A DNA stretch of 59,099 bases, filler included, from Dugesia japonica (lineage: Eukaryota), in assembly GCA_001938525.1 (NCBI GenBank). It is 5 parts of 5 records of this genome, joined end to end, with 100 filler letters (N's around TTAATTAATTAA, not from the genome) between each part and the next. Parts side by side here need not be neighbours in the genome. Positions count along the whole stretch, not along the records: positions 14,399 to 23,393 come from MQRL01206225.1; 4 more parts are not named here. One strand, 5' to 3'. A program made the translations under genes and the position numbers. This document shows, piece after piece, positions 1 through 23,393 of the stretch. The notes under the pieces are model-generated. The model had not been told where the DNA came from. It worked only from the letters and a program-made list of their open reading frames with translations, and made no database searches. Positions within the stretch are counted from its first letter, which is position 1. Each line of letters opens with the position of its first letter.

Positions 1-71
1 TTACATCACTAATCGGCGGGGGGGGGGTTCACTGAATGTGTGCAGAGGTTTACTGCCACTATCTATCTACT
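1..71. mobile_element. Right terminus of an AGTAG...CTACT-ended (Polinton-type) element
   Basis: G-run followed by ...CCACTATCTATCTACT. This is the same terminal motif as at 11696-11711 and 29839-29854. Confidence 0.5.
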
Positions 72-620
72 AATGGTTATCGTATGTAACGAGATAATAA
101 CTTTACAGAACATAACCCAATACAAAATATAAATTAATAATAATATTAATCGTAAGAATAAAACTCTTAGCAACATCTTAGTGATGTGTTTTATCTTATA
201 TCGGCAATAATCGCGGTGACAACTATAGTAAAGCAAACAATTGCAACAGATCAATTAATTGTGGATTTAAATATATTCATTCGTAACCGAGGTGTGAATA
301 TGGATTCAATGGTTAAATAAAGACTAATAGCATTAATTATGATTTATAGCGGTTGTTACTATTCCTACTATTGACATACATGAATGGTAACTGATAGAAT
401 TCTTAACGAATCATTCTAGGTGTGCGACACTATTCTCGTCACCATCAGAGTGTATGGAATATTTATCTAAAACCAGTTCAGTGGCATAAATTGTGATGAT
501 TTATTGAGTGATATTTTTTAGAGAAAGGCAACACTTTTACTGACAGAAATTTTACTGACAATTATGAAAGAGGTTACACACGCATGTCCAACAATGAGTA
601 TTAAATAATCAGCCAATTAT
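72..620 (-). pseudogene. Possible decayed multi-pass membrane protein (rhodopsin-like GPCR?)
   Basis: Hydrophobic segments in shifting minus-strand frames, interrupted by stops: YLILIVGHACVTSFIIVSKISVSKSVAFL, IIINAISLYLTIESIF, SVAIVCFTIVVTAII, LLRVLFLRLILLLIYILYWV. Confidence 0.25.
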
Positions 621-1899
621 TGCTGGAATTTTACTATAATGTGAAAAATGATTTATCGATTATACGAATCACAAAATCTTGGAAAGTTAACCATTTTATT
701 TTGTTAAACACAATTACATTATAAAAATTAACAATATTTACTTTCTTTTCCACAAAATTAATTCTGCAACGATTTATTAACTAATTCCAATTTATTTATA
801 CACAAAGGTTTCTTTAAATCGCCGGATTTCGCAAATAAATATTTTATCGAAGATGATTATAAGCTAGCTAAACTAGTAGTGATAACCAAATTTTTTCTTA
901 TACAGTTTTCTTAGCACACCCCAACTCTCTCCACACTGGGTAACCATTTTAAGATTCTCTATTAACCTTCTTATTGGTCTTGTCTGATTTTCAGAGTTTT
1001 TTTATTTTTTCCTTGTCTTTTATTGGTGCCTATTTTTAGGACATCATGTGATTCTAATTTCTTTGTTTCTTGTGTTTTCTAAGGTCCCCAATTGGCACAA
1101 TCTATATAGCCTTTTTACCTACTCTTCTAATGATATTCCTTTTTCTCTGTTGGTTAAATAGAATTCCTTGTGCCCTCCTAGATCCAAATTTTCTTTCCTT
1201 TTCTTCCTCCGATTTTCCTGTGAAAGTTTTAACATTTATTCACATTTTTGTTAAATTAATTTTCTTTATTACCAATTAATTAATTTTTTGGTTTATTTTC
1301 TAATATTATTCTTTACGATATTTAAATGATGGGATTATTCCCTGCTTATTCTTAATTGTGGTCGGCCCCTTAATAACTTCCACAATATCTTTGAATAGTT
1401 TCTTGTTACTTTCTTGCATTTCTTTCGGATCCTTTTTATTCTCTTAATTATTTTCTTCTAGAATTAAATTGTAAAATTTTGTTGGCTGGCCTCCTTTTTA
1501 ATATGGTTTAATACTTTGAATTGTTTATTTTCGTGGGTTGATATTTCACCCCAACAAATAAATAATATCCTCACAATACCTATAAACATTTATTTGCATA
1601 TCCTCTTCCTACATGACAAAGTAGTATTTATATCAAAAGTAACATTTCAAATATTAGTAAAATTAATCATTATTCAACTTCTGGGTGACTTGCATCTAGC
1701 GATTAAATATAAATTGATTTAAGTTTGTAATCATTACGTAATATTTTTTTATGAAAATTAATAAAATCTGACAGACAGAAAAAATTTAAATAATTAAAAA
1801 ATTAATATTATGTAATTTTTTAACAATAAATTTAATATTTATTAAGTAACACATTTTTTTACATTTTAATGTTATGAAGTTGTGTATCATTTGGATTTT

Positions 1900-1985
1900 C
1901 GGTGTGACGTCATACTTATCAAACCCCGTCAATTCTTGTCACATCTCTATACCGCCCTAAGTGTGTGATATCATTTATGGATTTA
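1900..1985. mobile_element. Harbinger-like MITE end remnant
   Basis: GTGTGACGTCAT...CCCTAAGTGTGTGATATCATTTATGGA resembles subterminal motifs of PIF/Harbinger MITEs. Confidence 0.3.
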
Positions 1986-4358
1986 AGGTTTTTTAAAATG
2001 ATTTTAATTGTTTTTATAAAACTTCATTGGGTTTTAATACGACTTATAAGAGTTTTATAAAGTTTTTATAGAGCTTGATAGGATTTTATTTTCGAATAAA
2101 GGGAAAAAGCACTCTATTCAATATGGCAATACTCGCTTTACACCTTTATCACTGGAAGATGTTTCTGAGTAAAAGGAAACATGAAATGATCACAATCAAC
2201 CAAATTCAAGAATATCGAAGTAGATAACTCTCACAAAATATATAAAGTTTTATAACATATATAGAAAAAAAATATAAGAAAATAGATAGAATTAAGTTTA
2301 TGGATGCTCGACTGCGTTCCTACCTAGAAAAAACAGCTGTATCCAATATAAAAATGTAAAGTCGCGGAGTTCCTGAAAGGTATGTTATGTTATTTAATGA
2401 AAACTTCGTATTTATATTAAATTCATAATTTAATATTAATTAGTAAGATATCAAAAAAGATATATGATGATTTGAAATATGAATACTTTAGGCAATCCAA
2501 AAAATTCAATTTTTAAATGTGGTGAATACACCAATGTCGTGTTTTAAACATTCATGAAACTATTGCATTAAATACAAATTAATGGACTACGCCTGACATA
2601 ACCCTATGAATATCTATTACATAATAAGTAATTGACAAAATAACAAAAATTCCAAAAACCAATAATTATTAATTATAAAACATATAATTATAAAACTATT
2701 TCGCAGTTTCTATATTATACCTATTTTTAACGTAGAATAAATTTCTGATTGGCAATCCTTCATTATATCGTTCAGCATTTGTCTAACATTAAAAAGAACA
2801 TAATATACGGATAATAAAATAGATTTTACTTGTAATACTGAGAATTATTCCAGATTTTTCTCGTCTTTTAAAAATAATTATAATAAATCATAAAAACTAT
2901 AAATATATTTGAAAATAATTACTATTTAAATGCTTTCAATATTCAAATAATTACCAAAAGAAATATTCAAAACAATCATCGAACTCTCATTTAAGAGTAT
3001 GATGGTAAATAAAAATAAGTAGGTAGCGCATCACTAAACCACAGCTGGTCGATATAACTTAAATTAATCAATTGATTAACCGACATATTTTCATCTGATT
3101 AATCAACCAGGACCAATTTTGAATGACCGACTCACGTGTAGCCATTTATCTGATGAATTCACTAGTAGAAACTTAACTTATACTTCTTATTTTTATTATT
3201 TAAATTGTTTCTGACATATTATTTTCAATGGTAGCCAGAGCTTCACTGTGGTATGTTTGACCGACATCTATAGCCTGGTAGTAATATGTTTAAACGGTAG
3301 TTATTATTGTTATATACAGCTTCACTGAAAGCATCTTTGATAGGCGATCACAACTATGCTGTGGTAAGGTTAGAATGGACAAATAATCTTTTTTGCAACA
3401 ATTATTTTTAAAAATCAAAACGCAAACTGATATAGCAACATCACATTAAAAATAATTGCGATAACGTACAAGTAAATTTCGATTTTACGTCACCCTTATT
3501 TTGAATATAAATAAAATATGAAAATTCCAGTTCGATTTTACATGAAAAAATAAAACGAACAACTCTTAACATAAGATGAGTTGATTATATTGTGATAAAA
3601 TGTCAAACTGTCGCAAATATACATGTTTAAAAAAAATCTATTAGTTTATATAAATTATATTCTAAAACAAATCAATTAAGTCAGTCTATCAAATAAACCA
3701 ATTCAATATATACATGCTGAAAAGTCAGCTAAGTATTCAGTCATCTTTAGTGAGTCAAAGTGAAGAGCAGAAGAAGATATAGTAAGATGATGCGCTGAGA
3801 TGGTGGCTGAAACGAGTGGATGTGCTGAACCGTGTGCAGGATTATGCAACAAGATGATTTTGCAAGACAATATGTTATGAATGACCGTGTTCAAATAACG
3901 TAAAGTATGATGTTTGAATGGTTCGTCTGTTTTTCTGGCCATAACAATTTTACAGTTTCTTTAATTATGTGCAAAATAATTATTTATAAATAAAAAAATT
4001 ATCAACAGGATTATGCGTCATCCTTTACTTTTTAATTTACGTAAAATCAAAATTCACTTGTAATGCAAAAAATTTGAAATTGGGAAACTATTTAGATGTA
4101 GAAAAATAACACTTGCTTTTATTTAAGAAAATTATATAATTATTTTCTTCATATTATGTAATTATTTCTTATTAATGACACATAAAAATCCTTTAATTAG
4201 AGTGAAATTGAAAGGTATTTATTTATTATCAATAATTTACCTTTTCACTTGAAATATATTTCTTTATTATATCAATCATTTTGATTTTATTCAGAAAACC
4301 ACTTTTGTTTAAAATTTCAGGATCCTAATTAAAACAAATTAATTTTATAAATTTTCAT

Positions 4359-4960
4359 TAATAGGTAGATGCTAATGTACTGAGCTACCTCAACCTGCTA
4401 AAAAGAGTCTAATAATTTAGAAATTTTCAATTTGATGGATCCACTCATTTTTGAAGAAAAAATTGATATCGACTTTGATTGATTGAAAATACGCACGGAA
4501 GTTTTGATTATTAGTATTTAATTTTCTCTGCCTAAAAATAAAATATGGCTTCGAATTTGAGAACGTTCGACTGAAAATTAAAATTTGACTATATATATTG
4601 TCTAAAGGACAACTATCAAAAAACGCTTCCTTACTAAAAAATGTACTTAAAAAAGTTAATATCCTATCACAAAATGGCTTGTAAATTTTTCAATTTAATA
4701 CATTTCTGTAAAAACAATTGAATTTGGTATTATTGAATGCCTAATTATGGCTTAGTTATAATTTTTAGTCAGATTCAAGGTAAAAAAAAATATTAAAGAT
4801 TATAAAAAACAAAATATAGTGGTAATTTTCAAAAATATACCATTCAATTTACAATGTAAAAATTGACTATAGATTGCCTTAAGGATTACAATCGAGAAAT
4901 ACTGTTTTCTAATCGTTAAAGTACAGAAGGATATGCTAGTCCGCTAGCATCTACCTATTG
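4359..4960. mobile_element. ~600-bp MITE with terminal inverted repeats
   Basis: AATAGGTAGATGCTA at 4360-4374 is the reverse complement of TAGCATCTACCTATT at 4945-4959. CAT flanks both sides (possible 3-bp TSD). No ORF. Confidence 0.6.
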
Positions 4961-5049
4961 CATTAGAATTTACTTTCAATCCATCTTCTAATTTAATGCC
5001 AGGAAACGATATTTCATCTGAAACTATTTGAAAAAATTTATTAAATTTC

Positions 5050-6893
5050 AATAGATAGCTATTCTATATGTAACTAAGTCAGCACTGGCCCATCTACCCA
5101 TCGTCAGTTAATCAGATTTAGCCCATTACGCAATAAATACATGTAGCCTATAATTTTATGCACTTCATTAAGTAATAGGTATGTGTCGATGGCGTAAGAA
5201 ATATAATATTATATAAATAACTACGTAATTAATACTCGATCATACTTAAATTTATACTTAAATTTACCGATTTTATCGATTATATGGACGGAAAATAATT
5301 TTTTATCAAATTAAAATATTTTAATGTTTTTAACTTAAGTGAAATTTGTGATGTTATCATCTTACCAATCATTCAATCCGAAATTTTACACTGGTCAAGA
5401 ATATTCTTGTTAAAAATCAATACTTTACACACAACAAATAAAATGGAAAAAATATATTAGAATAATGAAATGTTTAAGTGAATTTCACGACAATAATATT
5501 ATTTGCCCACTGACCAATTTTTACATTAGCTATTGAATATTAATATTAACATTAGAAATATATATTTATAAGCTCCTCTGATAATATAATAATAATAATT
5601 AAAATAATAATAATACTCAATAATGAATCATAATAATCATAATATTTATTCACATCATATATAATATCTAAAATTTATTTTAAATGCTATATATTTTAAT
5701 GAGAAATTTAAATGGATTGATGTAAAATAATATGATAAATTAAATCATTATGAAAACTTTATAATTATATGAATTTATTGATTGTTTAATTTTCAAACTA
5801 GTTCTAATGATTTATTGTGAATTTAAAGTTAAAAATTAGTTTAATAATTAAATTTTGATAATTTTTATATGTAGTTTAGATAAAAACAATATAAACTTAA
5901 CTAAATAAACTGTCAAATTTAAATGGTTTTTATGAAAGTTATGATAAATGCAAATGGTATTTAGCAAATAATATAAAATTATTTTGAAAACAGGTTATAA
6001 TATAATGATTTATTTTGATTTAACTTTATAAGTTAAATGTTATAACTATTTTATTTAAATTTCATGTAATAATTTTTAAACTTGTAAATTTCAGTAAAAT
6101 TGTAATAATTTAAATGATTTAATAGTCAATAATTATATGTAACAATACTTTTAAAATTACTTGAAATTTAAATTAAATTGTGTTAATTTAAAACTTAAAT
6201 ACTTCATAAGACATCATTATTTAATTTTGACATGTAATAAATACGACTCTGATTGAATTAAGTCAATGAATTTATTTGTTATTTGAAATTATTTCAGATT
6301 CACATGAAGAAACCACTCAAATCCTGCAATAATTACACGCAAAGATTTTAATCAAAATTATTTTCATTATATTTTGAACAAATACTTTTATTATGATTAG
6401 TATTTTATATTATCATGTAGCAGCTAATGTTAAAATTGCCGTGTGGAACTTCACTTAAATGTATTTGTTTATTTTAATATTTTTTTCTATTTTATTTGTT
6501 GTGTATAAAGTTTATTTATTTCTAATTATAATATTTTTGATCAGTGTAAAACTACGCTTTGGATGATGGGAAACATGAATAAAATCTTAACAAAAAAGCA
6601 TGAAAATATTTTAAAAATTCTATGTCCGTCAAAGAAATAAAAAATCTGTAAATTTAAACGAAATATCATGAAAATCGGTTAATTTAATCAAAAATTATTA
6701 AAATCACTTAATTTAAACAAAGAATTAAATTCACTAGTGATTGTGTAATTAATGTATAATAGTATACTTATTGCACCATTGATACTCATCTTTTGCGTTA
6801 CAAAATCGTTAAATTTATAGGCTTCTCTGTATTTATTTCGTAATCGGCTAAACTCAATCTGACGATGGTGCAGTTCAGACTTATATCTCTACT
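5050..6893. mobile_element. ~1.8-kb non-autonomous element with long degenerate TIRs, right end ...TATCTCTACT
   Basis: CCATCGTCAG..TTTAGCCCATTACGCAATAAATACA..AGCCTATAA (~5097-5153) is inverted at ~6810-6868. The interior is extremely AT-rich and non-coding. Confidence 0.55.
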
Positions 6894-6919
6894 CATATAA
6901 AAATAAATATTAAAGCGAA

Positions 6920-8100
6920 AATTAATTACTATTCATGTTTTCCAAAAATATATTGTTAATAAATTTAATAATTTCTTCATTTACAATGTTTAAAATATTT
7001 TCATATTCCTGATTTCTAATCGATTTTAGCTTCGAATTGACATTTTTATACAATTGTTGAAATTTACTATCAGAAATATTTTTGAAATTCACATCAAGAA
7101 TAATTGGCCTAACAATGAATCAATAAAAATTATATATTTAATTTTATTTATACTCAGCGAGATGTGAAATAAATTTCTTAAACAATAATATTATTTCATT
7201 GACAGTCTTCCGATATTTAAGGTTTGATAATAACGTGTCAAGTGAATTAAAAAAATCCAAATTTTTTATCCAATCTTCTTTCATCTTATGCTTACTTTCT
7301 AACAATTTGAACTTTTCAAGGGGGCTTGTTTGAATATAAATTTTTACATGAACAAGTTTTGTTTGACAATAATTAATTATCTCTCTATTAATTTTATTAT
7401 TATCATTATCTAAACATAAAATAAATTTTCAATGAAAATATGATGTTCATTACCTGATTTGTAGTCTATAATAACAGCAATTTTATCATAATCCTCACAT
7501 TCTTTCAATAATTTCTCATTAGTAATATCAAAATAACTATAATAAATAATTTGCATTTCCTCTTTAATGATTGGATGAATTTCATAATCCAAATATATTT
7601 CTATTGAAATATTTTCGATTATTTTCAATTCGGAAATCAAATTTGATAAATTATTTAATTCTTGTATATTCATCATGTATTTCTAGCATTGTTTCAATAA
7701 AATAAATATAGAAAATTATCAATTAAAACCTTATTTTGGAAAACAAAATATTCGCAATTGGTTTTAATAAAATAACATTTTATCGAAAATTTTTCTATTA
7801 AATTTACGAAAGCAGGAATATTTCGCCCAACCAAATCACGTAAGATATCAGAACTATTAGTTAATTGACTGAAACAATATCAAAATAAAAATTAAAAAAA
7901 ATAATTTTACTTTCCGAATATTACATAGTTTGATCCATAAATTTTATCCAATGATATTGATCTGATATTTCTAGTGAATTGGAATACTTCCTCCTTCAAT
8001 TCCTTTGATGTAACAGCTAATTTAATATTTCAATAAATAATTTTTTCAAAATTATTTATTAACATTTTGAGATGAAATGAATAATTTTTTCAAAGTTTTC
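6920..8100 (-). pseudogene. Uncharacterised multi-exon gene or pseudogene, possible F-box-like N-terminus
   Basis: Successive open segments: LFIENIKLAVTSKELKEEVFQFTRNIRS, ORF 7410-7676, QTKLVHVKIYIQTSPLEKF..., IVRPIILDVNFKNISDSKFQQLY.... No firm family motif. Confidence 0.3.
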
Positions 8101-8539
8101 TATTGATTTTTGTAACTTGCTAAAATAAAAATTATTCTGAAAATTTATTATATAATTCAAAATTTTGATAAGCACTTGATTCTTAATAGAATCAAGTAAC
8201 TTGATTCATAATAGAATTCAACAAAATAAGTTATTACACAGTTTAATGAGAAAAAATAAATTTATATTGATACATTTAAAATAATTTTACTAATTTAATA
8301 AATGTGTATTAAATAATAAAACTGATGAAATTTTTTTTGTGATTCAATATAAACTGATAAAAAAAGGTTAAAAAGATAAGCATAGAATAAAAAAATTAAT
8401 AATAAAAATTTTTTATATTTTTTATTGATTTATTTTAAGGGATGATTGTTAGGCGCATGTTAAAATTATCTCAATGACTGAATTATTTTAGAAATGTTGA
8501 AATTAGAGATGATTAATATAATTATTTGCAAAAGAATTA

Positions 8540-9026
8540 ATTATTTGTCAAGTAGAAAAATGTCATTTCCGACATTTATTATTATTTGAATTCAACAGAG
8601 GTGTTAATGCATCGAAATTCGCTGAATCAATTTATGCAATGGGTTCTTGATTTCAAATAGTGATATGTTGATATACTATATTTAACGTACTAGAAGTCTT
8701 TATTCACGCTAACAACTCGGAATTGGTTATTATGATACACCATCAATCAACTATAGTGCGAACTTTTAAAATCATGGGTAAAGATCTTTTTTGAATTGTT
8801 GTTGGTGATGAAAAAATATACTTTCATGATGATGCCAATAAAAGAAATGAATAGCTTAGTTGTTATGAAGAACAACTTCTCATTTTGCATCCAATTTCCT
8901 CTCCGATTAAAAATTACTTTAACTTTTATACTTCCAAACCAAAGGATATTTTAGCCATGGAATAGAAAGGTTTTCAATTTTTTTGGAAAGAATTGTAAAT
9001 AATGAAAGGGGATATTTTTTGATTAG
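8540..9026 (+). mobile_element. Internally deleted mariner transposase remnant
   Basis: HFRHLLLFEFNRGVNA (mariner N-terminal HTH), IVVGDEK (cf. IVTGDEKW) and a C-terminal FSHGIER..WERIVNNE-like segment, with frameshifts. Confidence 0.75.
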
Positions 9027-9229
9027 TATTTGTACTTTTTTGTTAAAAATCAATACATTTTATTATTATTATTTTAATAAAGAATGAAAAAGTAAATAAC
9101 CGTTTAATTTTTTCATTGCTTTCAACAAATGGTGATACATATGAAGACTTTATTTTCTAAAACATTAATTATTATTAATATTAAATCAATACATGTATAT
9201 AATTCTTCAAGTATTAATATTTTTTTAAT

Positions 9230-10330
9230 ACGAACGAATCTTGCACCTTACATGTAGTGCTTGAAATGCATGCAAAAATAATACACAGCCAAGAACGTCT
9301 TACATGTGATACAGTATATTTTTTAATGACATGTCATTGATTTCAATCTATACTCAACAACGTTTTCTCTTCATTCGTTATTTCATTGTAACATACTGTT
9401 TAGATCGTATCGAAACTGACGTATATACAATTTCCAATTACAAATTCGTTAGCAACTTTGTAATTTTTTGAAACATGTAAGTTTGTTAAATGAACCAATA
9501 ACTTATATTTTAGACGATTCAGTTCAAACACCATATCTGCGCCATACTATAGCGTCATTAATTCTGCCTTTTGTAATATTCTCTAAAACATTGACTTTTT
9601 AATATTGTATTTAATTATCTGAAACATATACATAATTTTAAGAGTATTTAAGGCTCTCATTATTAAATGTCTCTAAATTTTCCTTTGACATTACAAATAT
9701 AATTTTCAACTTTTTATTTGTTTTATTGTAACTTTTTCATAAAAACTAGTAAATAAATTTTTTCTGCATAATTTCTCATCCAATCAAATCTGCTGTCAGT
9801 CTGCAACTAAGAAAATAACTTCTGTACAATTGATCAATTGTCCCTTCATTTCTAACTATCACAATAATTTCAAGTGTGGAATCATTTGCACACCGCCATC
9901 TTTCGTTGCTAACATTTAGGTGTTGTTCTCGAAATTTACAAAAAACATCTAAACTCATGTTTTATTCGGGTTTCACTATCTAAAACACATTCAGCTTTAT
10001 TCCCTTGAATTGATACGGTAACACTTGGTCTCACTTCACTTGATAGTACGAAAATTTCATTTTCAGTTCAACTTCAATTCACCCAATAAATTTTATTATT
10101 TCCAAACATTCACTTTACTAAAAACCTGTATAATCTCTTTGAATATTTTCCCATATTATGGCACTATTCGACCCCAATATGGAAAATCAATCAATATATT
10201 TGTAAATGAGTAGAACCATGTTGTTTTGGTACTATCGTTTGAAACCACTTTTTTATATGAAACCGATCACTTAAGTAGATGGATATGGTCTTAATGGATC
10301 AGAATTGGACGCATCATGAAAGGTATGAAT
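9230..10330 (-). mobile_element. Heavily deleted Ty3/Gypsy remnant (gag start, protease, RNase H)
   Basis: SDPLRPYP (cf. TDLLRPRP at ~46100), MSLDVF...RCANDSTL (cf. protease 47237-47590) and YCITCKTFLAVYYFCMHFKHY (RNase H). Confidence 0.7.
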
Positions 10331-10652
10331 TTTCAAAACTTTGGCGATAATTTTAACATCTTAAAGAAAACAATTAATTTTAATATTGAAACCATGGAAA
10401 ATTAGCACTACATTTGTTTTTTTAAATGAATGAATTTTCACAACTTAATGTAATCAGTGAAATTTCAAACCCTTGGCATGAACTTTTACACTACAATATT
10501 TTAACCAAGTCCACTAAAAAAATAATCATGTAAAATATCACACTTGAATCATGACTGAGAAAATTTGAAATTTCGGTAATCATTATTTCGGACAGATGTA
10601 AACGTGCAGGTATTTCCATGTTATTGTTGAATGTGTAACGAAGTGACGGGTC

Positions 10653-11711
10653 AGTAGATAGATAGTAACGCATTTAAACACCCCCTCCCCCACTCAAAGT
10701 AGAAAATTTTCGAGGTCAAAGTGTTAACGTATACTTGATTCTTATTGGTGGGAGATTTTTTCAAGGTCAAACTATCTACGTATACTCGATTCGGATTGCA
10801 GGAATATTTCAATGTCAAAGTGGCTCATTTTACTCAATTCTGAGTTGCCGAAATTTTCAAGGTCATAATATTTCAAGCATAAATGTAATTAGGTCAAGGT
10901 TATTTCCATGACAACTATCATCCGGGCAGACTTCATATTTAATTTCTTTGCGCAGATTTAATATTTAAATTTCCCGCGCAGACATAATATTTTTTGTTTA
11001 AATTAATTGATTTGTGTGATTTGTTTAAATTTACTGAATTCAGTAATTTAACTTAATGATTATAAATAAACACATTTACATGTAACTTATTTTGTTATTT
11101 AAACTAATTAACTTGTATTATTAAAATCTAATTTACAATTAAGATCCAGATTTAAACAACTGTTCATAATGACTGTGATTATCTGTTTTATCAACAATAA
11201 ATTTTATGTTTTGATTAGTCTTTTCATTTGTCTTTTATATATTATTAATAATATTGTCTGAGAAGCATGTAATCTTAATATTGCTAGGAACGATTAATAT
11301 TGATGTTAATATTGGTCGAGGGAAAATCACTTCAAAATTTGAAAACTTAAACAATATAAGTTTTCCCATACATTTTCTTTGAAAAATCCTTAAAAATCAT
11401 TAAATCACTTAATTTAAATAAAAATCTCAAAAATCAGTAAATTGCCATGGAAATAACCTTGACCTAATTACATTTAACCTTGACCTACATTTACTCGATG
11501 GTTGAAATAGTAAACCAATCAGAATAGAGTATAATGAGATACTTTGACCTTGAAAAAATGTCCCACTGATCAGAATCAAGTATACGTAAACAATTTGACC
11601 TTGAAAAAATGTCCTACTGATCAGAATCAAGTATACGTAAGCACTTTGACGTTGAAAATTTTTCTATCTTGGAGGGAAGCGGGTGTTTACATGCGCTACT
11701 ATCTATCTACT
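10653..11711. mobile_element. 1059-bp non-autonomous element with ~260-bp TIRs, AGTAGATAGATAG...CTATCTATCTACT termini (mini-Polinton-like)
   Basis: 10653-~10915 is the reverse complement of ~11442-11711. The TIRs contain ~51-bp subrepeats. Flanks CGGGTC / CGGATT resemble a decayed 6-bp TSD. Confidence 0.75.
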
Positions 11712-14238
11712 CGGATTTCATTGTGTATACGTATGTTTATACAAGTGGGACGGTAAAATATGTATTAAAGATGTCAAAATGAATACTCGACCAGCCTCCT
11801 TTTTAAACCTTAAGTCCTAATTTTAGTTGTATTCTACTCAGAAAAAAACTGTTTATACATTGTCTAAAACAATTTTGTCGTAAAATATTTTGTCATCTTG
11901 AATATTTAGCACGGGATCACATAATGATAGTTGTTAAAATTATAATGAAATATTAATTTATACTGTAACATGTTAGCCCCATTAGAATCAGCATAAAAAA
12001 CTGCATATACATTGTTTCATCGAAAATGATATATTCAAAAATGACCTCCCACCGAAGATCTTATAAAGAATTTGGTTTTCAGATTTTAGTTTAAAAAATT
12101 AAAATGTAAAATAGAATTATCTAATGAATTTTTATCAAAAAATGTTTCCTTCATCAAGGTGGTGGTTAAAGATACATATCAATTAAATAGGTCAAAGTCC
12201 ACTTATAAAAATGTTTTCATCAATAACATAATGTATATTAGGATCGTAATAAAATGTTGAAATCGAAAGTATTATTTAAATTTAAAAATATACATTTTAA
12301 AAACATGTACCATTTTATAGAGAATAAAAAGTAGACTACAATAAATTTAGTAGAATACCTTCACACAAGTGTTTTCTAACAATGTTATCGATAAAATAAA
12401 AAAATAAACTGTTCAAAAATACTAGAAATAAGTACGTAATACACACTAATATGTGTCGCTGTGTAAAACATGATAATTCGGTAATCTTTTCGAAAATATG
12501 AAGAACAGTTAAGTAATACATATCAATGTGCCTTTGGGTATTTGCATTGGAAAAGTTGTATTCAATTCGATTAGTTTTTCTTCCCCTTTGTTTCTATCAT
12601 TTCTTAATCACCTATTTCATCAAACTAATCCATATAACAACCAACAAAATCATGAATGTATCAATAAAACAAAGAGAAATCTTACTAATTTATAGTTCTT
12701 TATAGCCTCCAAAATCGTATTTTCATTCTAAATAATAATTAAAACTTATTACTAAATTTCAATAAAATAAAAAGTAATCGATTTCTAATAATAAATGGTT
12801 ATTTATTAAAAAAAACGTTTAAATCCTAAATTTAAGATAAATAATTATTTAACTTAATTTAATGAAATCTAAGCTTTCCGTCTACTTGTTTTGTGTAGCA
12901 TAGTAATCTTATAGAAAATATAAATTTTTATGTCAATTGTTTCTAAATTTAAAGTAAAATTAAAAATTTTTATCAAAGTAAAATTTGGAAAAAATAAAAA
13001 AATTGTTTTGACTTAAGCTTTCAGATGTTAATATCAAATAATAATTGTCCTAAATATAATAATGGATACAAAAAATTACTTAACTTGAATCTTTTAAATG
13101 AAACAAAATATTAGACACTGTATGTAGGTGGATAGCAGCGCATTGAAACACCTCTTTCTTCCAAAGTCCCTTCTCACAAACAAAGTGGTTTAGAAATTTA
13201 GTGGTTTGAATTTTGATCTGGTGCAGTATAATCGTTTCTGATTAGACAAAAGTTTATATTGACTTTCCCTGTCGGATGGTATTGCACAAGTATTACAATA
13301 GTATCGTCATATTCGGAATGATGTGACGTATTTCATAGTACAATCATCAGTTCAATGAAGAGTGAAAGCAAAAATGAATATATAAATGAATATAAATGGA
13401 AAACTTGCTCCACCCAGTATTTTGATTGGATCAACTTGAGATTGAACCATTCGACTGGATATTAGAAACTTCCTATGTATTACCTAAATGACTATACAAT
13501 GTTTTGTTCTCGAGATAACGGGTTTAATGCCCCGCAACACTTTAATGATAATCGTTTTACAATTAAAATTATTAGTAGAATAATTGTTGGACTTAACCAT
13601 TGGTCGCATTTTAAATTTCATTAAAATTTTTATAAAATACTGATAATANNNNNNTATATATATATATATATATATATAATCTAATATTAATTTTTACAAA
13701 TATTTAATAGCACCATTGGAATCTGCTTAAACAATTAACAATACATTGTTTTATCGAAAATTGGTTTCCTAATATACCAAACCCCTTTCGCCAATGAGGT
13801 AATTTAGAAATTTGGTTTTTATATTTAGAAAGAAAATAAAAAAAGTACAATAGGAACAGACCCGTACAAAATTTATGAAAATGGCTACTTCTAATTGAAA
13901 AAGGTGGATAAATGTACAAATCAATTTTATAATTTGAAGTCCATTTAAAATCGAATTTTCTGTTCATAACCTATATAAAAACTTCGATTACAATGTTTTT
14001 TGGTTTTTAATCTTAAAAATTTAATTATCAATATCAAAGAAACCAAAATAAAAATGTGATCGAAGCTTTTATTTAAATGAATATCAAAGTAGGTTTTCGA
14101 TATCCTTGCCACTTTACATAATATTGTTTATTCTTACCGCTTTCTCTTGATTTTATAATTTTTTTATTCTATATATATAGGAAGTGAAATAACTTTAAAT
14201 TCTTGCTAATAAAAATTTTTTGCTAAAATAAAAAAAGT

Positions 14239-14275
14239 CAATTCCTGACGAAGACAAGGTCGAAATATCGAATTG
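14239..14275 (+). ncRNA. Minimal type I hammerhead ribozyme motif (Penelope-associated type)
   Basis: CAATTC-CTGACGA-A-GAC-AAG-GTC-GAA-ATAT-C-GAATTG. Helix I is CAATTC/GAATTG, the core is CUGANGA/GAAA, helix II is GAC/GTC, and helix III is the palindrome ATAT. Confidence 0.7.
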
Positions 14276-14298
14276 TTATCCAATATCAATAATTAAAA

Positions 14299-14398
14299 NN
14301 NNNNNNNNNNNNNNNNNNNNNNNNNNNNNNNNNNNNNNNNNNTTAATTAATTAANNNNNNNNNNNNNNNNNNNNNNNNNNNNNNNNNNNNNNNNNNNN
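14299..14398. other. Artificial scaffold-joining spacer N44-TTAATTAATTAA-N44
   Basis: The identical 100-nt spacer occurs four times. The 12-mer has stops in all six frames. Confidence 0.95.
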
Positions 14399-14536
14399 AG
14401 AAAAAAAAACCAGCCCAAAAATAGTGTCACCAAAAATAGTACCCTCATCGTTATGTGTTTTCGAGCCCCCCCCCCACGTGGGGGGGTTCCGTCTAGCGCT
14501 ATGCAAGTACGGGCAGTGTGCCGCTATCCTCCTACT
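14399..14536. mobile_element. Right terminus of a CTACT-ended element
   Basis: ATGTGTTTTCGAGCCCCC...GGGGGGGTT...GTGTGCCGCTATCCTCCTACT matches the terminus at 29786-29854. Confidence 0.5.
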
Positions 14537-14932
14537 GTTATTAACTAAAGATTTCCAATAAATAAAAAAGAAAAATATAATTTTTACTACCACTATTTTG
14601 TTTACTTAATATTTTTACAATACCTTCTAATAATATCTCATACATTCTAAATAATTAAAAATAATAATTCGACGTTGGAGATTATTAGTATTAGAATTAG
14701 TATGTTTTTTAACTATGATCTCTGACATCGTATCTTAAATAAAGAAATAAATATTTTATAAATAGCTATCAGATTCGTAAATTTAATCAAAATAATATGA
14801 TAATTACGATAACCAAATATTTAGAGATAAAATAATAGCAAGAACAGTGATATCAGAGAATAAATAAATTGTAGCAAATAAATAGATAATATATTAATAC
14901 AATTTCAAAAATTAATTGTAATTATGTTTTAG

Positions 14933-15218
14933 ACGATAGTTGTGCTATTCTTCTATGGATCAGTGAGTTTTATTTATTTATTGAAATAATAACAAATCTA
15001 GTTATTATTATTCTTGCTGTCCATTTTCTGGAAACACGATTCAAATTGTTCAGTGAGTTTTTTAAACTATTTTCTTAACAAAATTTAATACAAATCTTTT
15101 TATGTTATAAAAAAATTAATTAAACAAATCAGAATTTGCTGATAAGTGTGCGAATTCAGGAGATGCTTACGTTAATTCAGTACCCGGTGTTGTAAATACG
15201 GATACAGATGAAATTTAG
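14933..15218 (+). CDS. Candidate micro-exons encoding a hydrophobic segment (DDSCAILLWI-IIIILAVHFLETRFKLF-KFADKCANSG...)
   Basis: AG/GTGAGT-bounded phase-1 exons 14933-14962 (30 nt) and 15002-15052 (51 nt). The next acceptor is at 15132. Confidence 0.45.
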
Positions 15219-15228
15219 AAACTCTTAT

Positions 15229-16640
15229 AATATTTATATTTGAATATTGCTATTTGAATATTGTTATTTGAATATTGCTATTTGAATATTGCTATTTGAA
15301 TATTGCTATTTGAATATTGACATTTGAATAATGTTATTTGAATATTTATATTTGAATATTGTTATTTGAATATTGCAATTTGAACATTGCTATTTGAACA
15401 TTGCTATTTGAATATTGCTATTTGAATATTGCTATTTGAATATTGTTATTTGAATATTGCTATTTGAACATTGTTATTTGAATATTGTTATTTGAATATT
15501 GCTATTTGAATATTGTTATTTGAATATTGCTATTTGAACATTGCTATTTGAATATTGCTATTTGAATATTTATATTTGAATATTGTTATTTCAATACTGT
15601 TATTTGAATATTGCTATTTGAACATTGCTATTTGAATATTGCTATTTGAATATTTATATTTGAACATTGCTATTTGAATATTGCTATTTGAATATTGACA
15701 TTTGAATAATCTTATTTGAATATTTATATTTGAATATTGTTATTTGAATATTGCAATTTGAACATTGCTATTTGAATATTGCTATTTGAATATTGTTATT
15801 TGAATATTGTTATTTGAATATTTTTATTTGAATATTGTTATTTCAATACTGTTATTTGAATATTGCTTTTTGAACATTGCTATTTGAATATTAAAATTTG
15901 AATAATGTTATTTGAATATTAAAATTTGAATAATGTTATTTGAATATTTATATTTGAATATTCTTTTTTGAATATTGCAATTTGAACATTTCTTTTTGAA
16001 TATTGTTATTCGAATATTGCTATTTGATTATTGCTATTTGAATATTGCTATTTGAATATTGACATTTGAATAATGTTATTTAAATATTTATATTTGGATA
16101 TTGTTATTTGAATATTGTTATTTGAATATTGCTATTTGAACATTGCTATTTGAATATTGTTATTTGAATATTGCTATTTGAACGTTGCTATTTGAATATT
16201 GCTATTTGAATATTTATATTTGAATATTGTTATTTGAATACTGTTATTTGAAAATTGCTTTTTGAACATTGCTATTTGAATATTGTTATTTGAATATTGC
16301 TATTTGAATATTGCTATTTGAATATTGCTATTTGAATATTGTTATTTGAATATTGTTATTTGAATATTGCCATTTGAACATTGCTATTTGAATATTGTTT
16401 TTTGAATATTGCTATTTGAACATTGCTATTTGCATATTGCTATTTGAATATTTATATTTGAATATTGTTATTTGAATACTGTTATTTGAATATTGCTTTT
16501 TGAATATTGATATTTGAATATTGTTATTTAAATATTGCTATTTGAATATTGATATTTGAATATTGGTATTTGAATATAGTTATTTGATTATTCATATTTG
16601 AATATTGATATTTAAATATTGTTATTTAAATATTGTATTT
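15229..16640. repeat. 14-bp satellite (G[C/T]TATTTGAATATT)n, about 100 units
   Basis: Direct tandem repetition over ~1.4 kb. Confidence 0.97.
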
Positions 16641-16953
16641 CACATTTGATTTATTTCTCTAATTGTTGGCATATTTTTAATTCCAATAACTTCCCCCAAT
16701 TTCTTGGTGACTTATTTATCTTGATGAGACACGGAATTTCGATGTCTTCTATATTTATCAATTATTGCTGATTTATATCATTTTGAACAGTTAACAATAA
16801 TCATTTAAAATCATTAATTTATTAATATAACAAAAAATAAAATTAAAAATTCTTATCTAAAGTTATTTCTTTCAAAAGTATAAGCATAAATACCAGAACA
16901 ATTTATTTATTTTATTTTTCAATTAGGATAATTTATTTATTAAAATTTTCCAG

Positions 16954-18195
16954 CTAAATGTCTACAAATGTGTACAAGAAAAGGTAACTTTCGTTTAAAA
17001 TTACAAAAAATATTTCTAATTAATTTATTAATTCCTAATTTTACAATTAAAAATTTACCTTTTTAAATTATTTTATCATTAAAAATTTTTTTCTTAAGTA
17101 AGCATTTTCAAACTCATTCATAAAACACGTTTAAAATTAAAGTTTTCAACGTTACAATATTTTTCAATTTTAAAATTTATATATATATATATATTTACCC
17201 GAAGTTTATTTATTTAATTTTTTATAATTCAACATTTCAGATCATTTGCAATACGCATTAATAAAAAGCAGAAAAAGAAAATATCAAAATGGTAATTTTT
17301 CATTATTTATTTTATATATTGATGGGGTATTTCATCATCGATTTATTCTCGTTTATTAAGAATTAGAAGCAAAAATTAATCAATGCTTTGGTAATATAAA
17401 AATTGGTAAATTGATTAGCATTTTATTATCGATTTATTCTCGTTCATTCAGAATTAGAATCAAAAATCAATCAATCATTTGGTAAATATGTATTTTATGA
17501 ATTGTTTCCAACTAATATTAAGAAGTGCTATGATAAATAGTGTTATTCATGCGTGACCAGTCATAAGTAATATTTATTTATTTTCCTTAATTTCATTGTG
17601 TTGCCATTTGGCAGCAGGGCCGGACGGATGCCTGGTCAACCGCATAAGTTCCCATGTCATTCTCGTTATTAATAAATTATTTTAATCCTTTTTTTTAAAA
17701 AAAATTACCATAAATAACTTTATAATAATTTAAAACATAATTACTCATATTAATAAAAATTTTCAAGTGTAATATTTAATATATGTATATACTAAAATTA
17801 AAACAACGATTTTTAATTCTACTTATGACAATTTTTTATGTGAAAGAGGTTAGGTAAATGCAATTCTAAAAAATATCTGTTATTTCTATTTATTTATTTG
17901 AGAATGAAAATATAAAAGTAGGTAGTAGCGATAAGAAAACAACAATAAATTGACTAATAAAATAGTAAATTGAATGCAATATCCTTATTGTGAAGAGCTT
18001 TTTTTAAGTAAACGCGGTGTAAGTAAAATTTGTAAAACTCAGAAATGGTATTAAAAATATATTTCAGCGACTTATTTAAATTAAATATTTACAAATGTAT
18101 TTATAATTCCAGAAAATTTGGACATAAAATTTGAAGCGAGATTTCAAGAAATTATTGGTTAACGTTGATTTAATTTCTTTAGCTTTATAATTATT

Positions 18196-18254
<59 letters not shown>

Positions 18255-18422
18255 TATCATCATACTAGATAAATTTAATAAAATTACTTTTGCTTAGATA
18301 AAATTGATCGTGCGCGCACACCATTAAAAGGTTAGAATCATTATTACTATTATGTTGTAATTAAAAAATCTAACTGAAGATAAAATTATTTCCAAATATT
18401 AGACTATCGTCATCTTCATTAA
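16954..18422 (+). CDS. Candidate micro-exon gene (six symmetric phase-1 exons plus a terminal exon), coiled-coil-like product
   Basis: Exons 16954-16983, 17241-17291, 17361-17390, 17452-17481, 18113-18157 and 18298-18330, then 18403-stop. The six internal exons are AG/GT bounded with 3n lengths and splice into one open frame. AATAAA at ~18451. Confidence 0.6.
18196..18263. repeat. (ATC)n microsatellite
   Basis: Direct inspection. Confidence 0.95.
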
Positions 18423-18961
18423 TTACTTCTCAGATTCATTGAAATTATTAAATAAATAAAATAATTAATTTACAAATAAGAATTTATTTAAATTATTATT
18501 GGATAATAATTATTATAAATTGTGTTGATTTTCGGTTTTTTTAAAATTTCTTGATGTTTATTTTAATGAAATGAATAAATGTAATTTGTACCTAGGGTTT
18601 TTTCTCATGATGTGACATTATTCTTTTGAAAGAAAAAACTGTGTGTACAAAGTGTTTGATGATTTCACTTACTTCTTGTCTTAGCTTTTCTTTAATTCTC
18701 TTTTGAATTTTTCGTCAATTGTCACCTTTTTTCGCAAAGTGAGTGTATTTTCATTACAATCTTTTTACTAGCATATTTCTTTCCCAACATATGAACTTTT
18801 GAATTTGTGCAAAATTGTTTCTTGATTTTTGTAATTTTATTATTAATAGTGCTTGAATTCTGAATATTATTCTAGAACTATAATATTATGACTACATAAC
18901 ACATTAAAAAAATTAATTTAATAATAGATTTATAAATTATGATATTATTTCTGTTTTAGAT

Positions 18962-19848
18962 ATGAAAATTCAATTCCAATTTGATGATATCGATCACAAA
19001 TCAATAGAATTGTATGTTCACAATAATCACAATATTGTCCAAGTAAAACAACAAATTTGTTCTAAATTACCACATGCAAAACNNNNNNNNNNNNNNNNNN
19101 NNNNNNNNNNNNNNNNNNNNNNNNNNNNNNNNNNNNNNNNNNNNNNNNNNNNNNNAAATATTGACAAATCAAATACAATTGTAAATTGTTTTATTGATTC
19201 ATCAATGATTGCCAGGTGAATGAATATATTGATTGAAATGAATTGATAATAATTTAATATAATATTTGATAGTGAAATTATTGTTGTGAAATTGCAAGGC
19301 AAAATGCGTCTCCCAGACATCATACAAATAAATAAGAATCAAACAATTGGTCAATTGAAAGAAATGATTGGGAAAATTATCAATTCAAAAGATTTCTCAT
19401 TATTCAAAGAAATTTTAAATAGCGAAAATCAAATGAAAAAAACTTTGTTAAACTTGAGCAGTTATTGCCTTGAAAATGAATTGAATGATGAAGACTGTAT
19501 TCGTATCGTTCAAACGTTATTTTGATATTTTCTAATAAATAGAATAATTCCAGTTTTTATAGAGTTGAAGAAGAATTGATTATTAAATCAATATTTGATG
19601 AAAAAGTCTGTATTACAGCTGCCTATAAAAACACGGATCAAGTTTCATCATTAATAGAATTTGTGGAAAATGATTACAATTGGAATTCAAATAATTTTGT
19701 TTTGTTTTGTAATAACAAATATTTGGAAGAAGATAAATATATCTGTGAATATGATATTTGTGCAGATTCTCCAGTCAAAATTTGTAATATCGCAAAGTTA
19801 GCAACTTTTATTCTAATGATATTTCAAAGTATACTAATATTTCAATAA
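18962..19848 (+). CDS. Protein with three divergent ubiquitin-like domains and a hydrophobic C-terminal tail
   Basis: Three exon-sized ORFs each show a beta-grasp pattern (NIVQVKQQI; TIGQLKEMI; TDQVSSLIEFVE..FVLFCNNKYLEEDKYICEYDI, cf. ubiquitin LIFAGKQLEDGRTLSDYNI). A GT-AG intron at ~19216-19272 keeps frame. Confidence 0.6.
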
Positions 19849-22153
19849 TTTGTTTGCTAAAAGATCTCAAATGCTAGTTTAGATATTCCTTCCATTCTAA
19901 TAACACCTTGTTTTGACAAGTTTTACAAATTAATTTTTATTGAATGGCTGAAATAATTTTACGCTTCCAAATTAAATAAATTTCCTCTCATTCCGTTCTA
20001 TTAAGACCTTATTCATCGACTGTTGTTCATATTTTCCTTAGGAATTCTCTGACGATTTAAATCTTGATTATTTTATATCATAATAGTTCGATAAATTATA
20101 AAGCTTCGATCAAAATGTTGTATTTTTATATTTTTTAGTTGTTATCAATTCGAATTTTCAGCAATTATCTTTAGGAATTAACTTTATGATTTATTCAAGA
20201 TTTATTTATAAAAAGAATTTATTGAATTTTACTGAACTATATGTATTTAACACGCCGCGATAAACAAAGCCATCTTGAAGGTTAAAAATTCGTCCCAGCT
20301 TAAGCACTTCATTGTTCGGCCAGTGTAAAGATGTCAAACCAAACAAAAAGATAAGAAATAAGAAGATGGGGCAAGGAAATGAGGGGAAAGTTTGGAAACC
20401 CTAATTAAAATCGACCACATCAATTTCCTGGTCGATAGAAGAGGAAATTTTCTTTTCACATTTTCACGTAACCCAACCTGTTTTATCCCTGGTTCATTTT
20501 AAACACACTATGATCAAACAGAATAAATAAAATTCATTTTAATATTTGAATATTTCATTTTAAATATTCCATATTTTGGATTTCGATAAATTTAATATTA
20601 ATTTCATTTAAATATATCACAACTTGCTTTACTAAAGTAATTCTTTATGTTTCTTCCTATAAACTATAGAGTCTGATGATACAAGATTGGTGAGCTCATA
20701 ACAATGAGTTTTTGACTTTAAGGATTTCCGGTGTTTCATGTGGTGGTTGAATTTTTTCGGTTTTTGAGTTCTTGGAAAGAGTAGGTGTATTTGTATGTTG
20801 TTGTTTTGAGGTTGATTTTTTGGATTATTGATGAATTTATTTTAGGGTTTATGGTTAATGGTTTGTTAGTAATGTAGGTGAATAGTATATAGATAAGTGT
20901 GCACTGGAACACCTATGTGCGTACCCCCCATTTGGGTGTAAAATGATTACATAAGTTTTCTAATGTAAATAATCGAAGACGCATTGATGTGTATTATGCA
21001 ATGTATTACATAGTGTTTCGGCTTATATAAGATTTAGTCGAGTAATAAATTACGTGACTTTTGCTCGTATTTTGAAAGGTTTACCGAATTATCGGGTTTT
21101 ATATGTAATGAGTAAATTTGTGTGTATTACATAACTTTTGTTCGTATTTTTTTTTGAATAGTTTATTGAATAATTTGAACAGTTTACTGAATTATTTGAC
21201 TAATTTACCAAAGTATTTAAATTTTCGGATGATTTTTTAAGCAAATTTTTCGAGAAGGTTGACTTAGAAGGTTGAAAATTTAGGGATGAAAGTAAAGGAA
21301 AGGAATATCGCAAGTGGATATTTCGAAGTACAAAGTGTTATAGTCTACTTAGTGAAAAAGCGAGCATGCATGCAAAAATCATGGTACTAAAGAGTACAGA
21401 CATAAAACATCAATCATATATAGACTGAGATAATAACAACGAATATGTTTCTGTCTAACAATTTTGAAAAATGACAGAACGTAATTAATTAGTTTTATAA
21501 GTAAATTTGCGTTATCAAATAACGAAAATAATAGGGTTTGAATAAACAAAAACGAAAGTATCCCCTATGGTCACTAATACAATATAATAATGCACTTTTT
21601 TTCATGATATTGTGCTGTCACCATTTGTAAAGAAAATCCAAGTTTACCAATTTTAAAATCCCACGTTAAACATAGGAAAAAAATTCCAAAAATAACTAGA
21701 AGTCCTCAAAACGTTTCATGAATTTATTAGTAGTTAATAGAACTTTGTAAAAGATTACTAGACATTGATAAAAATTGTAATGTAATAAGTAGAAAACACA
21801 AAATTTGCATTATGGCTTCATTTTTTATTTTTTTGATTATATCTGATGTTTCATGAAACCTTAGCATTAACATATAAAAAGTATAGTAATTATCCTGGCG
21901 AAATGGCAGCCCTGTATGAATAACAACAATAATATTACATAGTTATTTAACAATTATCAATACTTACTCGTATTATCACTGTGCATTTCATTTGTTTTCA
22001 TCAATGGTCTTCAGTAATAACATTGATTGCACAATCGTACCCAAGGCAACCAAAAATATATCATTAAACTTTCGATTTAAATTTATAATCAATGGTGAAT
22101 GTGAATCTTTAGAATTAATTGATATATCGTAACAATTATTTTATTAATTGTAG

Positions 22154-23393
22154 AATCGAAGGTCTAGATAAACAAGAGAGGTGTGAAGCAGATATTAATT
22201 GGGAATTGTATCATGCTACAAAGCCACCGAAAAACATGCAAATATTGTTAAAAAAATATAAAAATATTAATCTAGCAAATTGGAAATCTCAAGATTGGAT
22301 GATGAATGAATTGAAAACTTTCTTACTAACTAAAAATCATAAAATATTTATTCAATTGTTTGGTGTGTATTTCGATGACTCGTTGTATGTTGCTATGGAA
22401 AATATGGAGGAGGTATGTTTTATTTTAGAGGGTTTTCAATTTAATTTAATCCTTTTGCAATTTTGCTTATTACTTTTAAAATTTAAAAAATATTTAAATA
22501 ATTTAAAATGAAAAACATTATTTCGAGAAAAAAGCAACTAGAATTAAAATTATAACTGAAACAAGTAAAAGTTTTATTCTATCAACAATGGAAGATGTTT
22601 CAATTACCTTAAATCAATTAAAAAAATTATTACAATCAAAACTACTGATAGTGAAACTTATTTAAGTACCATTAATAATTCAATAACAACATTAAATTAT
22701 TCTTTTAAAAGAATAAAATTAATTCCTCAATAAATAAATTCAAAAATTTATATTGAAAAAAGTATGATTATTGAGTAAATTATTTAAGTTATGATGAAGA
22801 TAAAGTGATATTTCTGGATGAGTATGGAGTAAGTTGCTCTTTGAGACAAAAATTTGGAAGAAGTTTGTTTAAGGCAAATAATTCAAACATAAAAGAAGAA
22901 TTATACGCTGCTATTAACTCAACAATATCGAATATTACTGAAATGAATTATATAAATTATTTTAGTCATGTTAGAGAGTTTGCGGTAATAAAATATTTGA
23001 AAATTTAATTTTCTTGTCTCATAATTTCTTTAAAATTTTTTATTATTTTTAACCTAAGATTAAATTAAGTTGAAACCCTGTATCATTTCATTCTATAATA
23101 AATATTTTGATGAAATTATGATTCAGGGAACTTTGAAAAATTATTTAAAAAGAAATAAAAGTTTTGAAAGAAAATTAATTTGCAAATGGTCGGAACAGAT
23201 TCTTGAAGGATTGGAATATCTTCACGATAGAAAAGTTGTCCATCGAGATTTGAATCGTACAATTTGTTGGACGAATTTAATGAATTATTTATTTATTTCT
23301 AGCATCGAACATTCTTGTGAATGCCAACATTGATTTGAAATTATCGAGTTTCAATTTATCAAAATATGAAAAGATTTATGGGCCCGCTTCTTT
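22154..23393 (+). CDS. MAPK-like protein kinase fold, probable pseudokinase; 3' end cut by scaffold end
   Basis: Exons 22154-22412, 23127-23256 and 23303-23393 give ...LYVAMENMEE/GTLKNYLK...[41 protein letters not shown]. Confidence 0.8.

What the first reader, a model, noticed from the sequence alone, without database searches (positions are those of the whole stretch)
16954..18460. Micro-exon gene built from symmetric phase-1 exons
Seen: six AG/GT-bounded exons of 30, 51, 30, 30, 45 and 33 nt are all 3n and phase 1, followed by a stop-containing exon and AATAAA. The spliced frame is xKCLQMCTRK-DHLQYALIKSRKRKYQN-ELEAKINQCF-ELESKINQSF-ENLDIKFEARFQEII-DKIDRARTPLK-DYRHLH*. It is invisible to the ORF track and contains an NLS-like KSRKRK and a heptad-like region. 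Established: schistosome micro-exon genes use short symmetric exons to diversify products by skipping. Inference: a similar architecture here, either a host gene or the accessory gene of a DNA transposon.
Basis: partly seen in the sequence, partly recalled or inferred. Interest (0 to 1): 0.7.

Follow-up and report, generated by a model that had tools for sequence, protein, structure and literature searches.

The report
Probable micro-exon gene, RNA proof missing
Six tiny, frame-preserving exons with unusually good splice signals probably form a small, previously unseen gene for a basic helical protein. No RNA or relative could be obtained, so it remains a well-supported prediction.

Summary
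Exons of 30, 51, 30, 30, 45 and 33 nt (16954-18330) are all AG/GT-bounded, 3n and phase 1. They join into one open frame that ends at TAA 18420-18422, with AATAAA at 18451-18460.

The bare pattern is not beyond chance. Equal or longer chains appear in 39% of dinucleotide shuffles and in control non-coding DNA of the same piece.

The splice signals are beyond chance. All six donors read G|GTNA. With that filter, 0 of 10,000 shuffles reach six exons. With the duplicated exon collapsed, 2 of 10,000 (-1 G filter) or 0 of 10,000 (-1 G and +4 A) reach five. GGTNA is threefold enriched on the + strand (P=0.0005).

Exons 3 and 4 are a 91-nt tandem duplicate. Its acceptor region, exon and donor are kept at 88%, while the rest of the unit has decayed.

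My best reading is a real micro-exon coding unit grown by exon duplication, encoding a basic amphipathic-helical peptide of at least 74 aa. Its 5' end is unresolved.

No homologues, paralogues, signal peptide or transposon features were found. The architecture is MEG-like, but membership of the schistosome family and diversification by exon skipping are untested.

The parts
16954..16983 (+). Micro-exon 1, 30 nt, phase 1. Acceptor ttccag, donor AAG|GTAACT. It holds two ATGs: 16958 (out of frame, giving a 25-codon ORF) and 16968 (in frame, giving a 74-codon ORF).
17241..17291 (+). Micro-exon 2, 51 nt, phase 1. Acceptor tttcag, donor ATG|GTAATT. It encodes the basic KSRKRK stretch.
17361..17390 (+). 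Micro-exon 3, 30 nt, phase 1. Acceptor attaag, donor TTG|GTAATA. It is copy 1 of the duplicated exon. An alternative in-frame donor at 17406 would make it 45 nt.
17452..17481 (+). Micro-exon 4, 30 nt, phase 1. Acceptor attcag, donor TTG|GTAAAT. It is copy 2 of the duplicated exon.
17329..17510 (+). Two tandem units of 91 nt. The core (32 nt of intron end, the exon and GGTAA) is 58/66 identical. The 25-nt tail of the unit has decayed to 15 matches plus indels.
   Evidence: (family D20)
18113..18157 (+). Micro-exon 5, 45 nt, phase 1. Acceptor ttccag, donor TTG|GTTAAC.
18298..18330 (+). Micro-exon 6, 33 nt, phase 1, 39% GC. Acceptor gcttag, donor AAG|GTTAGA.
18403..18460 (+). Putative last exon: 18 coding nt, TAA at 18420-18422, and two overlapping AATAAA at 18451-18460. 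Its acceptor (tattag) is the weakest of the set.
14933..14962 (+). Possible upstream exon A, 30 nt, symmetric and open in phase 1. Acceptor ttttag, donor TCA|GTGAGT. That it belongs to this gene is an inference.
15002..15052 (+). Possible upstream exon B, 51 nt, symmetric and open in phase 1. Donor TCA|GTGAGT. Together with exon A it would encode a 17-residue hydrophobic stretch. That it belongs to this gene is an inference.

Best explanation
A genuine spliced coding unit lies on the + strand. It consists of at least six symmetric phase-1 micro-exons and a short stop-bearing last exon.

The predicted product is a small (at least 74 aa), basic (pI about 9.2), hydrophilic and largely amphipathic-helical peptide. 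Every exon ends in G and begins with A, so each junction codon is Asp or Glu. One exon pair is a recent 91-nt tandem duplicate. Together these suggest that the gene grew by serial tandem exon duplication.

The 1-1 phase symmetry lets exons be gained, lost or skipped without breaking the frame.

What is shown: the exon geometry, the open frame, the excess of splice consensus over chance, and the duplication with its uneven decay.

What is inferred: that the exons are spliced and translated; where the 5' end lies (the in-frame ATG at 16968, or further upstream exons such as 14933-14962 and 15002-15052 across the minisatellite intron); and what the protein does.
For: The frame and exon boundaries are exact.

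All six donors read G|GTNA. With the -1 G filter, 0 of 10,000 shuffles reach six exons. With the duplicate collapsed, 2 of 10,000 reach five under -1 G and 0 of 10,000 under -1 G plus +4 A. Control DNA of the piece gives at most 4 or at most 1.

GGTNA occurs 10 times against 3.2 expected on the + strand (P=0.0005). GGTAA occurs 6 times against 1.2 (P=0.0015). The - strand has 4 GGTNA.

For each of the six donors, the most pyrimidine-rich acceptor within 27-60 nt gives a 3n exon open in the same phase.

The candidate splice sites are at least as consensus-like as four introns of the neighbouring kinase gene that frame and homology support.

In the duplicate, the core differs at 8 of 66 positions and the tail at about 11 of 25 (Fisher P=0.003).

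Exons are A-rich (AT skew +0.25) and introns T-rich (-0.05), the same direction as in the neighbouring gene.

Codon-position likelihood is 0.098 bit per codon. The neighbour's exons give 0.03-0.16 and chance exons give -0.03 +/- 0.18.

The stop, the AATAAA signals and the next gene's 5' region lie in a sensible tail-to-head order.
Against: The bare AG/GT, 3n, open-frame pattern is common by chance.

The -1 G criterion was chosen after seeing the sites.

A human-type donor matrix weighted on +5 G does not pick this chain.

The coding-potential signal is weak, and frame +1 scores nearly the same.

The first ATG of exon 1 (16958) is out of frame and gives only 25 codons. The 74-codon ORF therefore needs leaky scanning or upstream exons.

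Exon and flanking intron diverge equally between the duplicates (4 of 30 against 3 of 32). Three of the four exon changes alter the amino acid.

No homologue was found by any permitted search.
Confidence: 0.55

Rival explanations
1. A chance assembly. In DNA of 20% GC, open stretches of 10-17 codons flanked by AG and GT are frequent, and a reader can thread them into a frame. The 91-nt duplicate would then be a neutral tandem duplication in non-coding DNA.
For: Chains of six or more arise in 39% of shuffles, and chains of 5-8 arise in control stretches. The exons are about as long as a random open stretch. Coding potential is weak. There is no RNA or homologue evidence.
Against: Six of six donors have -1 G and +4 A, which none of 10,000 shuffles matches. 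The duplicate-collapsed test still gives P of 2e-4 or less. GGTNA is enriched on one strand only. The duplicated unit has decayed unevenly.
Confidence: 0.3
2. The micro-exons are real but belong to the downstream ubiquitin-like/kinase gene, as alternative 5' coding exons. The donor at 18331 would splice to the strong acceptor at 18959|18960, and the stop-bearing piece at 18403 would be skipped or be an alternative end.
For: Joining exon 6 to 18960 gives junction codon GAT and then runs in frame into the kinase gene's ATG at 18962 and its ORF. The acceptor at 18960 has a much better pyrimidine tract than the one at 18403.
Against: Frame compatibility has a one in three chance. The kinase gene's ORF opens with a natural Met-Lys-Ile-Gln-Phe ubiquitin-fold start. 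A GTGAGT donor at 18739 suggests the kinase gene has its own 5'UTR exon. In relatives L001 and L003 the called ORF begins at the ubiquitin-like exon. In L003 an opposite-strand gene lies about 200 nt upstream.
Confidence: 0.08
3. The exons are real but non-coding, as an lncRNA or untranslated leader exons. The open frame would then be incidental.
For: The first ATG is out of frame. Codon signal is weak. The duplicated exon shows no excess of synonymous change.
Against: Six of six exons (five of five independent ones) being 3n has a probability of about 0.004 or less for non-coding exons. The single frame stays open across all junctions and across all skip combinations.
Confidence: 0.05
4. An accessory gene of a DNA transposon.
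For: Some GC-richer islands of unknown origin exist in the piece.
Against: Inverted repeats around the unit are short and only 70-77% complementary, as expected in AT-rich DNA. No ORF of 40 aa or more at 14424-14561 or in 19850-22132 hits a transposase or any mobile-element family. No second copy of any exon lies in the piece apart from the internal duplicate.
Confidence: 0.02

Closest known systems
Schistosome micro-exon genes (MEGs; PMC10526429)
   Same: Most of the coding sequence lies in very short exons whose lengths are multiples of three, so exons can be skipped or added without a frameshift. Automatic annotation and ORF tracks miss such genes. The products are small.
   Different: MEGs have 10-20 exons, mostly of about 15 nt (range 6-81), and introns of 100-5000 nt. 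They have an N-terminal signal peptide, hydrophobic 'sticky' products, flatworm restriction and documented splice isoforms. This unit has six exons of 30-51 nt and introns of 61-631 nt. No signal peptide is shown, the predicted product is hydrophilic, basic and helical, the organism is unknown, and no isoform data exist.
Tandem exon duplication within genes
   Same: Exons 3 and 4, with their splice sites, are a 91-nt head-to-tail duplicate of equal length and phase.
   Different: Classical cases often yield mutually exclusive exons. Here both copies can be included in frame, and nothing shows how they are used.
Phase 1-1 symmetric exon modules and modular evolution (PMC3632108, abstract seen)
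   Same: All internal exons are 1-1 symmetric, the class associated with exon shuffling and duplication.
   Different: Those modules usually encode whole domains or disordered linkers of much larger proteins. Here they are segments of 10-17 residues in one short helix-prone peptide.

Membership tests
Schistosome-type micro-exon gene (MEG) | Most of the CDS lies in exons of 81 nt or less whose lengths are multiples of three | tested here: met
   The six exons are 30-51 nt and all are 3n. The definition comes from PMC10526429.
Schistosome-type micro-exon gene (MEG) | N-terminal signal peptide (secreted product) | tested here: inconclusive
   The 5' end is unresolved. The ORF from ATG 16968 has no hydrophobic N-terminus. 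Possible upstream exons 14933-15052 would add a 17-residue hydrophobic stretch, but no start codon lies in that frame.
Schistosome-type micro-exon gene (MEG) | Protein variation by alternative splicing (exon skipping) | not testable with these tools
What is shown is that every skip combination would stay stop-free.
Schistosome-type micro-exon gene (MEG) | Sequence kinship with known MEG proteins, or flatworm origin | not tested
   The exon-wise searches found nothing. The organism is coded and unknown.
DNA transposon with accessory gene | Terminal inverted repeats and a transposase ORF nearby | tested here: not met
   Only weak AT-rich inverted matches were found. No transposase family was found in the ORFs scanned at 14424-14561 and 19850-22132.
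DNA transposon with accessory gene | Multiple dispersed copies | tested here: inconclusive
   No further copy lies in the 9-kb piece. The rest of the genome was not available.

The most novel reading that the evidence does not exclude
An exon-duplication-driven micro-exon gene outside flatworms. It would use 1-1 symmetric 30-51-nt exons, including near-identical duplicated ones, to make a set of length and sequence variants of a small helical protein by exon skipping. This would be an independent invention of the MEG principle in a very AT-rich eukaryote.
Probability: 0.08. Interest if true: 0.65.

Novelty: new member of a known kind. Interest (0 to 1): 0.4.

Why it matters
If real, this gene is one that ORF tracks and most gene finders miss, in a genome whose proteins appear to be absent from the large public protein sets. 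It would also show exon-level tandem duplication building a small protein from 10-residue units. Confirming or refuting it needs only a few junction reads. If it is chance, it is a useful calibration: in 20% GC DNA, symmetric open AG/GT 'micro-exon' chains arise in about 40% of random 1.5-kb stretches, and only the quality of the splice consensus separates signal from noise.

Tried and rejected
- **Read laying.** No read evidence exists. No letter of 22467-22504 was sent to any search tool afterwards. Later ranges stopped at 22466 or restarted at 22505.
- **The look-up of sequencing runs.** Runs X1-X4 hold 26-32% of the sampled words of 16700-19000, but their kind is only guessed. Thirty-nt exons cannot hold a 31-letter genomic word, so this says nothing about splicing.
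- **Joined peptide.** It was joined only inside the closed Python machine, to check the frame and run statistics.
- **Exon-wise searches by reference or short degenerate pattern.** Pfam found nothing on the open stretches around exons 1-5 and exon A. The search for homologous proteins with 17228-17356 found no candidate sharing three words. Two metagenome scans with back-translated exons 6 and 5 gave 0 hits. These blanks are weak. A HMMER search with a 73-aa exon of the neighbouring gene found no near-identical protein, so this organism appears to be absent from those libraries.
- **The look-up of encoding contigs.** Two unspliced ORFs were not on record.
- **Rfam and tRNA scans.** Rfam over 14399-22466 and the tRNA scan found nothing.
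- **Human-type splice matrix.** It does not recover the chain. I rejected it as a poor model, because the neighbour's supported introns also lack +5 G.
- **Codon-position likelihood.** It is too weak to decide.
- **Hairpin at 17535-17670.** z = -1.2, not significant.

Full report
**Setting.** The piece (14399-23393) is eukaryotic DNA of about 20% GC.
- A 14-nt minisatellite of about 101 copies lies upstream of the finding (15229-16640).
- A + strand gene starts downstream at ATG 18962. It has three ubiquitin-like exons and protein-kinase exons.
- The organism is coded and unknown.

**The observation.**
- The exons are 16954-16983, 17241-17291, 17361-17390, 17452-17481, 18113-18157 and 18298-18330.
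- They measure 30, 51, 30, 30, 45 and 33 nt. Each follows AG, precedes GT, is 3n and is in phase 1.
- A last piece from 18403 carries TAA at 18420-18422, and AATAAA follows at 18451-18460.
No plain ORF of 40 aa or more covers it.

**Is it more than chance?** I built a dynamic-programming search for the longest chain of AG/GT-bounded, 3n, same-phase, open exons (30-60 nt, introns 40-700 nt).
- On those criteria alone the answer is no. The region gives 8 in phase 1, but 39% of dinucleotide-preserving shuffles give 6 or more. Control non-coding stretches of the same piece give 5-8 on either strand.
- The exons are about as long as a random open stretch in such DNA.
- The donors are another matter. 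All six read G|GTNA: four are GTAA and two are GTTA.
- Requiring only G at -1, the best-conserved exonic position of 5' splice sites (general knowledge), 0 of 10,000 shuffles reach six exons.
- After deleting the second copy of the duplicated exon, 2 of 10,000 reach five. Adding A at +4 leaves none.
- Real control DNA gives at most 4 (-1 G) and at most 1 (-1 G and +4 A).
- GGTNA occurs 10 times on the + strand against 3.2 expected (P=0.0005), and 4 times on the - strand.
- For each of the six donors, the most pyrimidine-rich acceptor within 27-60 nt yields a 3n exon open in the same phase.
I therefore treat the corrected significance as roughly 0.01-0.05, not 1e-4.
- A human-type matrix dominated by +5 G does not recover the chain. 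However, four introns of the neighbouring gene that frame and homology support have the donors cag|gtgaat, aac|gttatt, gag|gtatgt and atc|gtacaa. Weak +5 is therefore normal in this organism.

**The duplicate.** Exons 3 and 4 sit in two tandem 91-nt units (family D20).
- The core is the last 32 nt of the intron, the 30-nt exon and GGTAA. It is 58/66 identical.
- The remaining 25 nt of the unit align only with indels, at 15 matches. The Fisher test gives P about 0.003 when indels are counted.
- This uneven decay fits constraint on the splicing signals and the exon.
- Within the core, exon and intron diverge alike, and three of the four exon changes alter the amino acid. There is therefore no sign of purifying selection on the peptide itself.

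**Other intrinsic signals.**
- Exons are A-rich and introns T-rich, the same direction as in the neighbouring gene.
- Codon-position likelihood is 0.098 bit per codon. This lies within the neighbour's range and above chance exons, but frame +1 scores nearly the same. The signal is weak.

**The product.**
- From the in-frame ATG at 16968 the ORF is 74 codons, with pI 9.2 and GRAVY -1.0. It is rich in K, E, R, I and L.
- It has a basic KSRKRK stretch and about 40 residues with hydrophobic positions spaced 3-4 apart, which indicates an amphipathic helix (spacing read from the peptide).
- The first ATG (16958) is out of frame and yields only 25 codons. This argues that the true start lies upstream.
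- Two candidate exons, 14933-14962 and 15002-15052, have the only two GTGAGT donors in 830 nt. Both are 3n and open in phase 1, and both run in frame into exon 1. They would add a 17-residue hydrophobic segment.
- T-rich DNA gives hydrophobic peptides in any frame, and no start codon is seen, so this link is only an inference.
- The donor at 18331 is also frame-compatible with the strong acceptor before the kinase gene's ATG. A fusion reading therefore cannot be excluded.

**External evidence.** None could be obtained.
Those places were kept out of all later searches.
- Exon-wise searches were blank.
- The blanks carry little weight. A HMMER search with a 73-aa exon of the neighbouring gene found only distant relatives at 38% identity or less. 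This organism's proteins therefore seem to be absent from the libraries.
- Those relatives sit on short contigs without the upstream region (L001-L003).

**Comparison with known systems.**
- The architecture works like schistosome MEGs, which also have symmetric micro-exons and are missed by annotation (PMC10526429).
- The other defining MEG features are unmet or untested: signal peptide, splice isoforms and kinship.
- Nothing supports a transposon.

**Verdict.**
- Probably a real micro-exon coding unit grown by exon duplication: 0.55.
- A chance chain: 0.30.
- The remainder is split between alternative 5' exons of the kinase gene, non-coding exons and a transposon gene.
- A handful of junction reads would settle it.

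Noticed in passing
window 15229-16640: A minisatellite of about 101 copies of a 14-nt unit (consensus AATATTGCTATTTG, 86% matches). It would lie in a 1.9-kb intron if the upstream candidate exons belong to the micro-exon gene.
   Followed up: partly
window 18196-18263: An (ATC) microsatellite of about 23 copies lies inside the 140-nt putative intron 5. It is likely to vary in length between individuals.
   Followed up: no
window 18962-23393: A + strand gene has three ubiquitin-like exons (18962-19216, 19273-19515, 19554-19795). After a 2.3-kb gap come protein-kinase exons (22153-22412, 23127-23262, from 23309), with an HRDLNPSN catalytic loop. Relatives on L001 and L003 carry a single ubiquitin-like exon directly before the kinase and have about 40-nt introns. 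In L001 the loop reads HRN, so the catalytic Asp is missing there.
   Followed up: partly
window 19083-19156: A masked N run lies inside the first coding exon of the kinase gene. It was left as it is.
   Followed up: no
window 18739-18959: A likely 5'UTR intron of the kinase gene, with donor aaa|GTGAGT and acceptor ctgttttag two bases before the ATG. It suggests a separate transcription start near 18600.
   Followed up: no
window 14420-14560: A GC-rich island at the edge of the piece has a C9-ACGT-G7 palindrome and a 45-codon ORF followed by AATAAA. It has no Pfam match. It could be the end of an upstream gene or of a repeat.
   Followed up: partly
window 17540-17660: A GC-richer segment inside the 631-nt putative intron 4 has an imperfect inverted repeat. 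Its fold is not better than shuffles (z = -1.2) and it has no Rfam match.
   Followed up: yes
window 17406; 17849 and 17854: Further G|GTNA donor-like sites. The site at 17406 would extend exon 3 to an in-frame 45 nt. The pair at 17849/17854 has no in-frame partner acceptor.
   Followed up: partly
They lie in the 715-nt kinase-gene intron and were avoided in all later searches.
   Followed up: no
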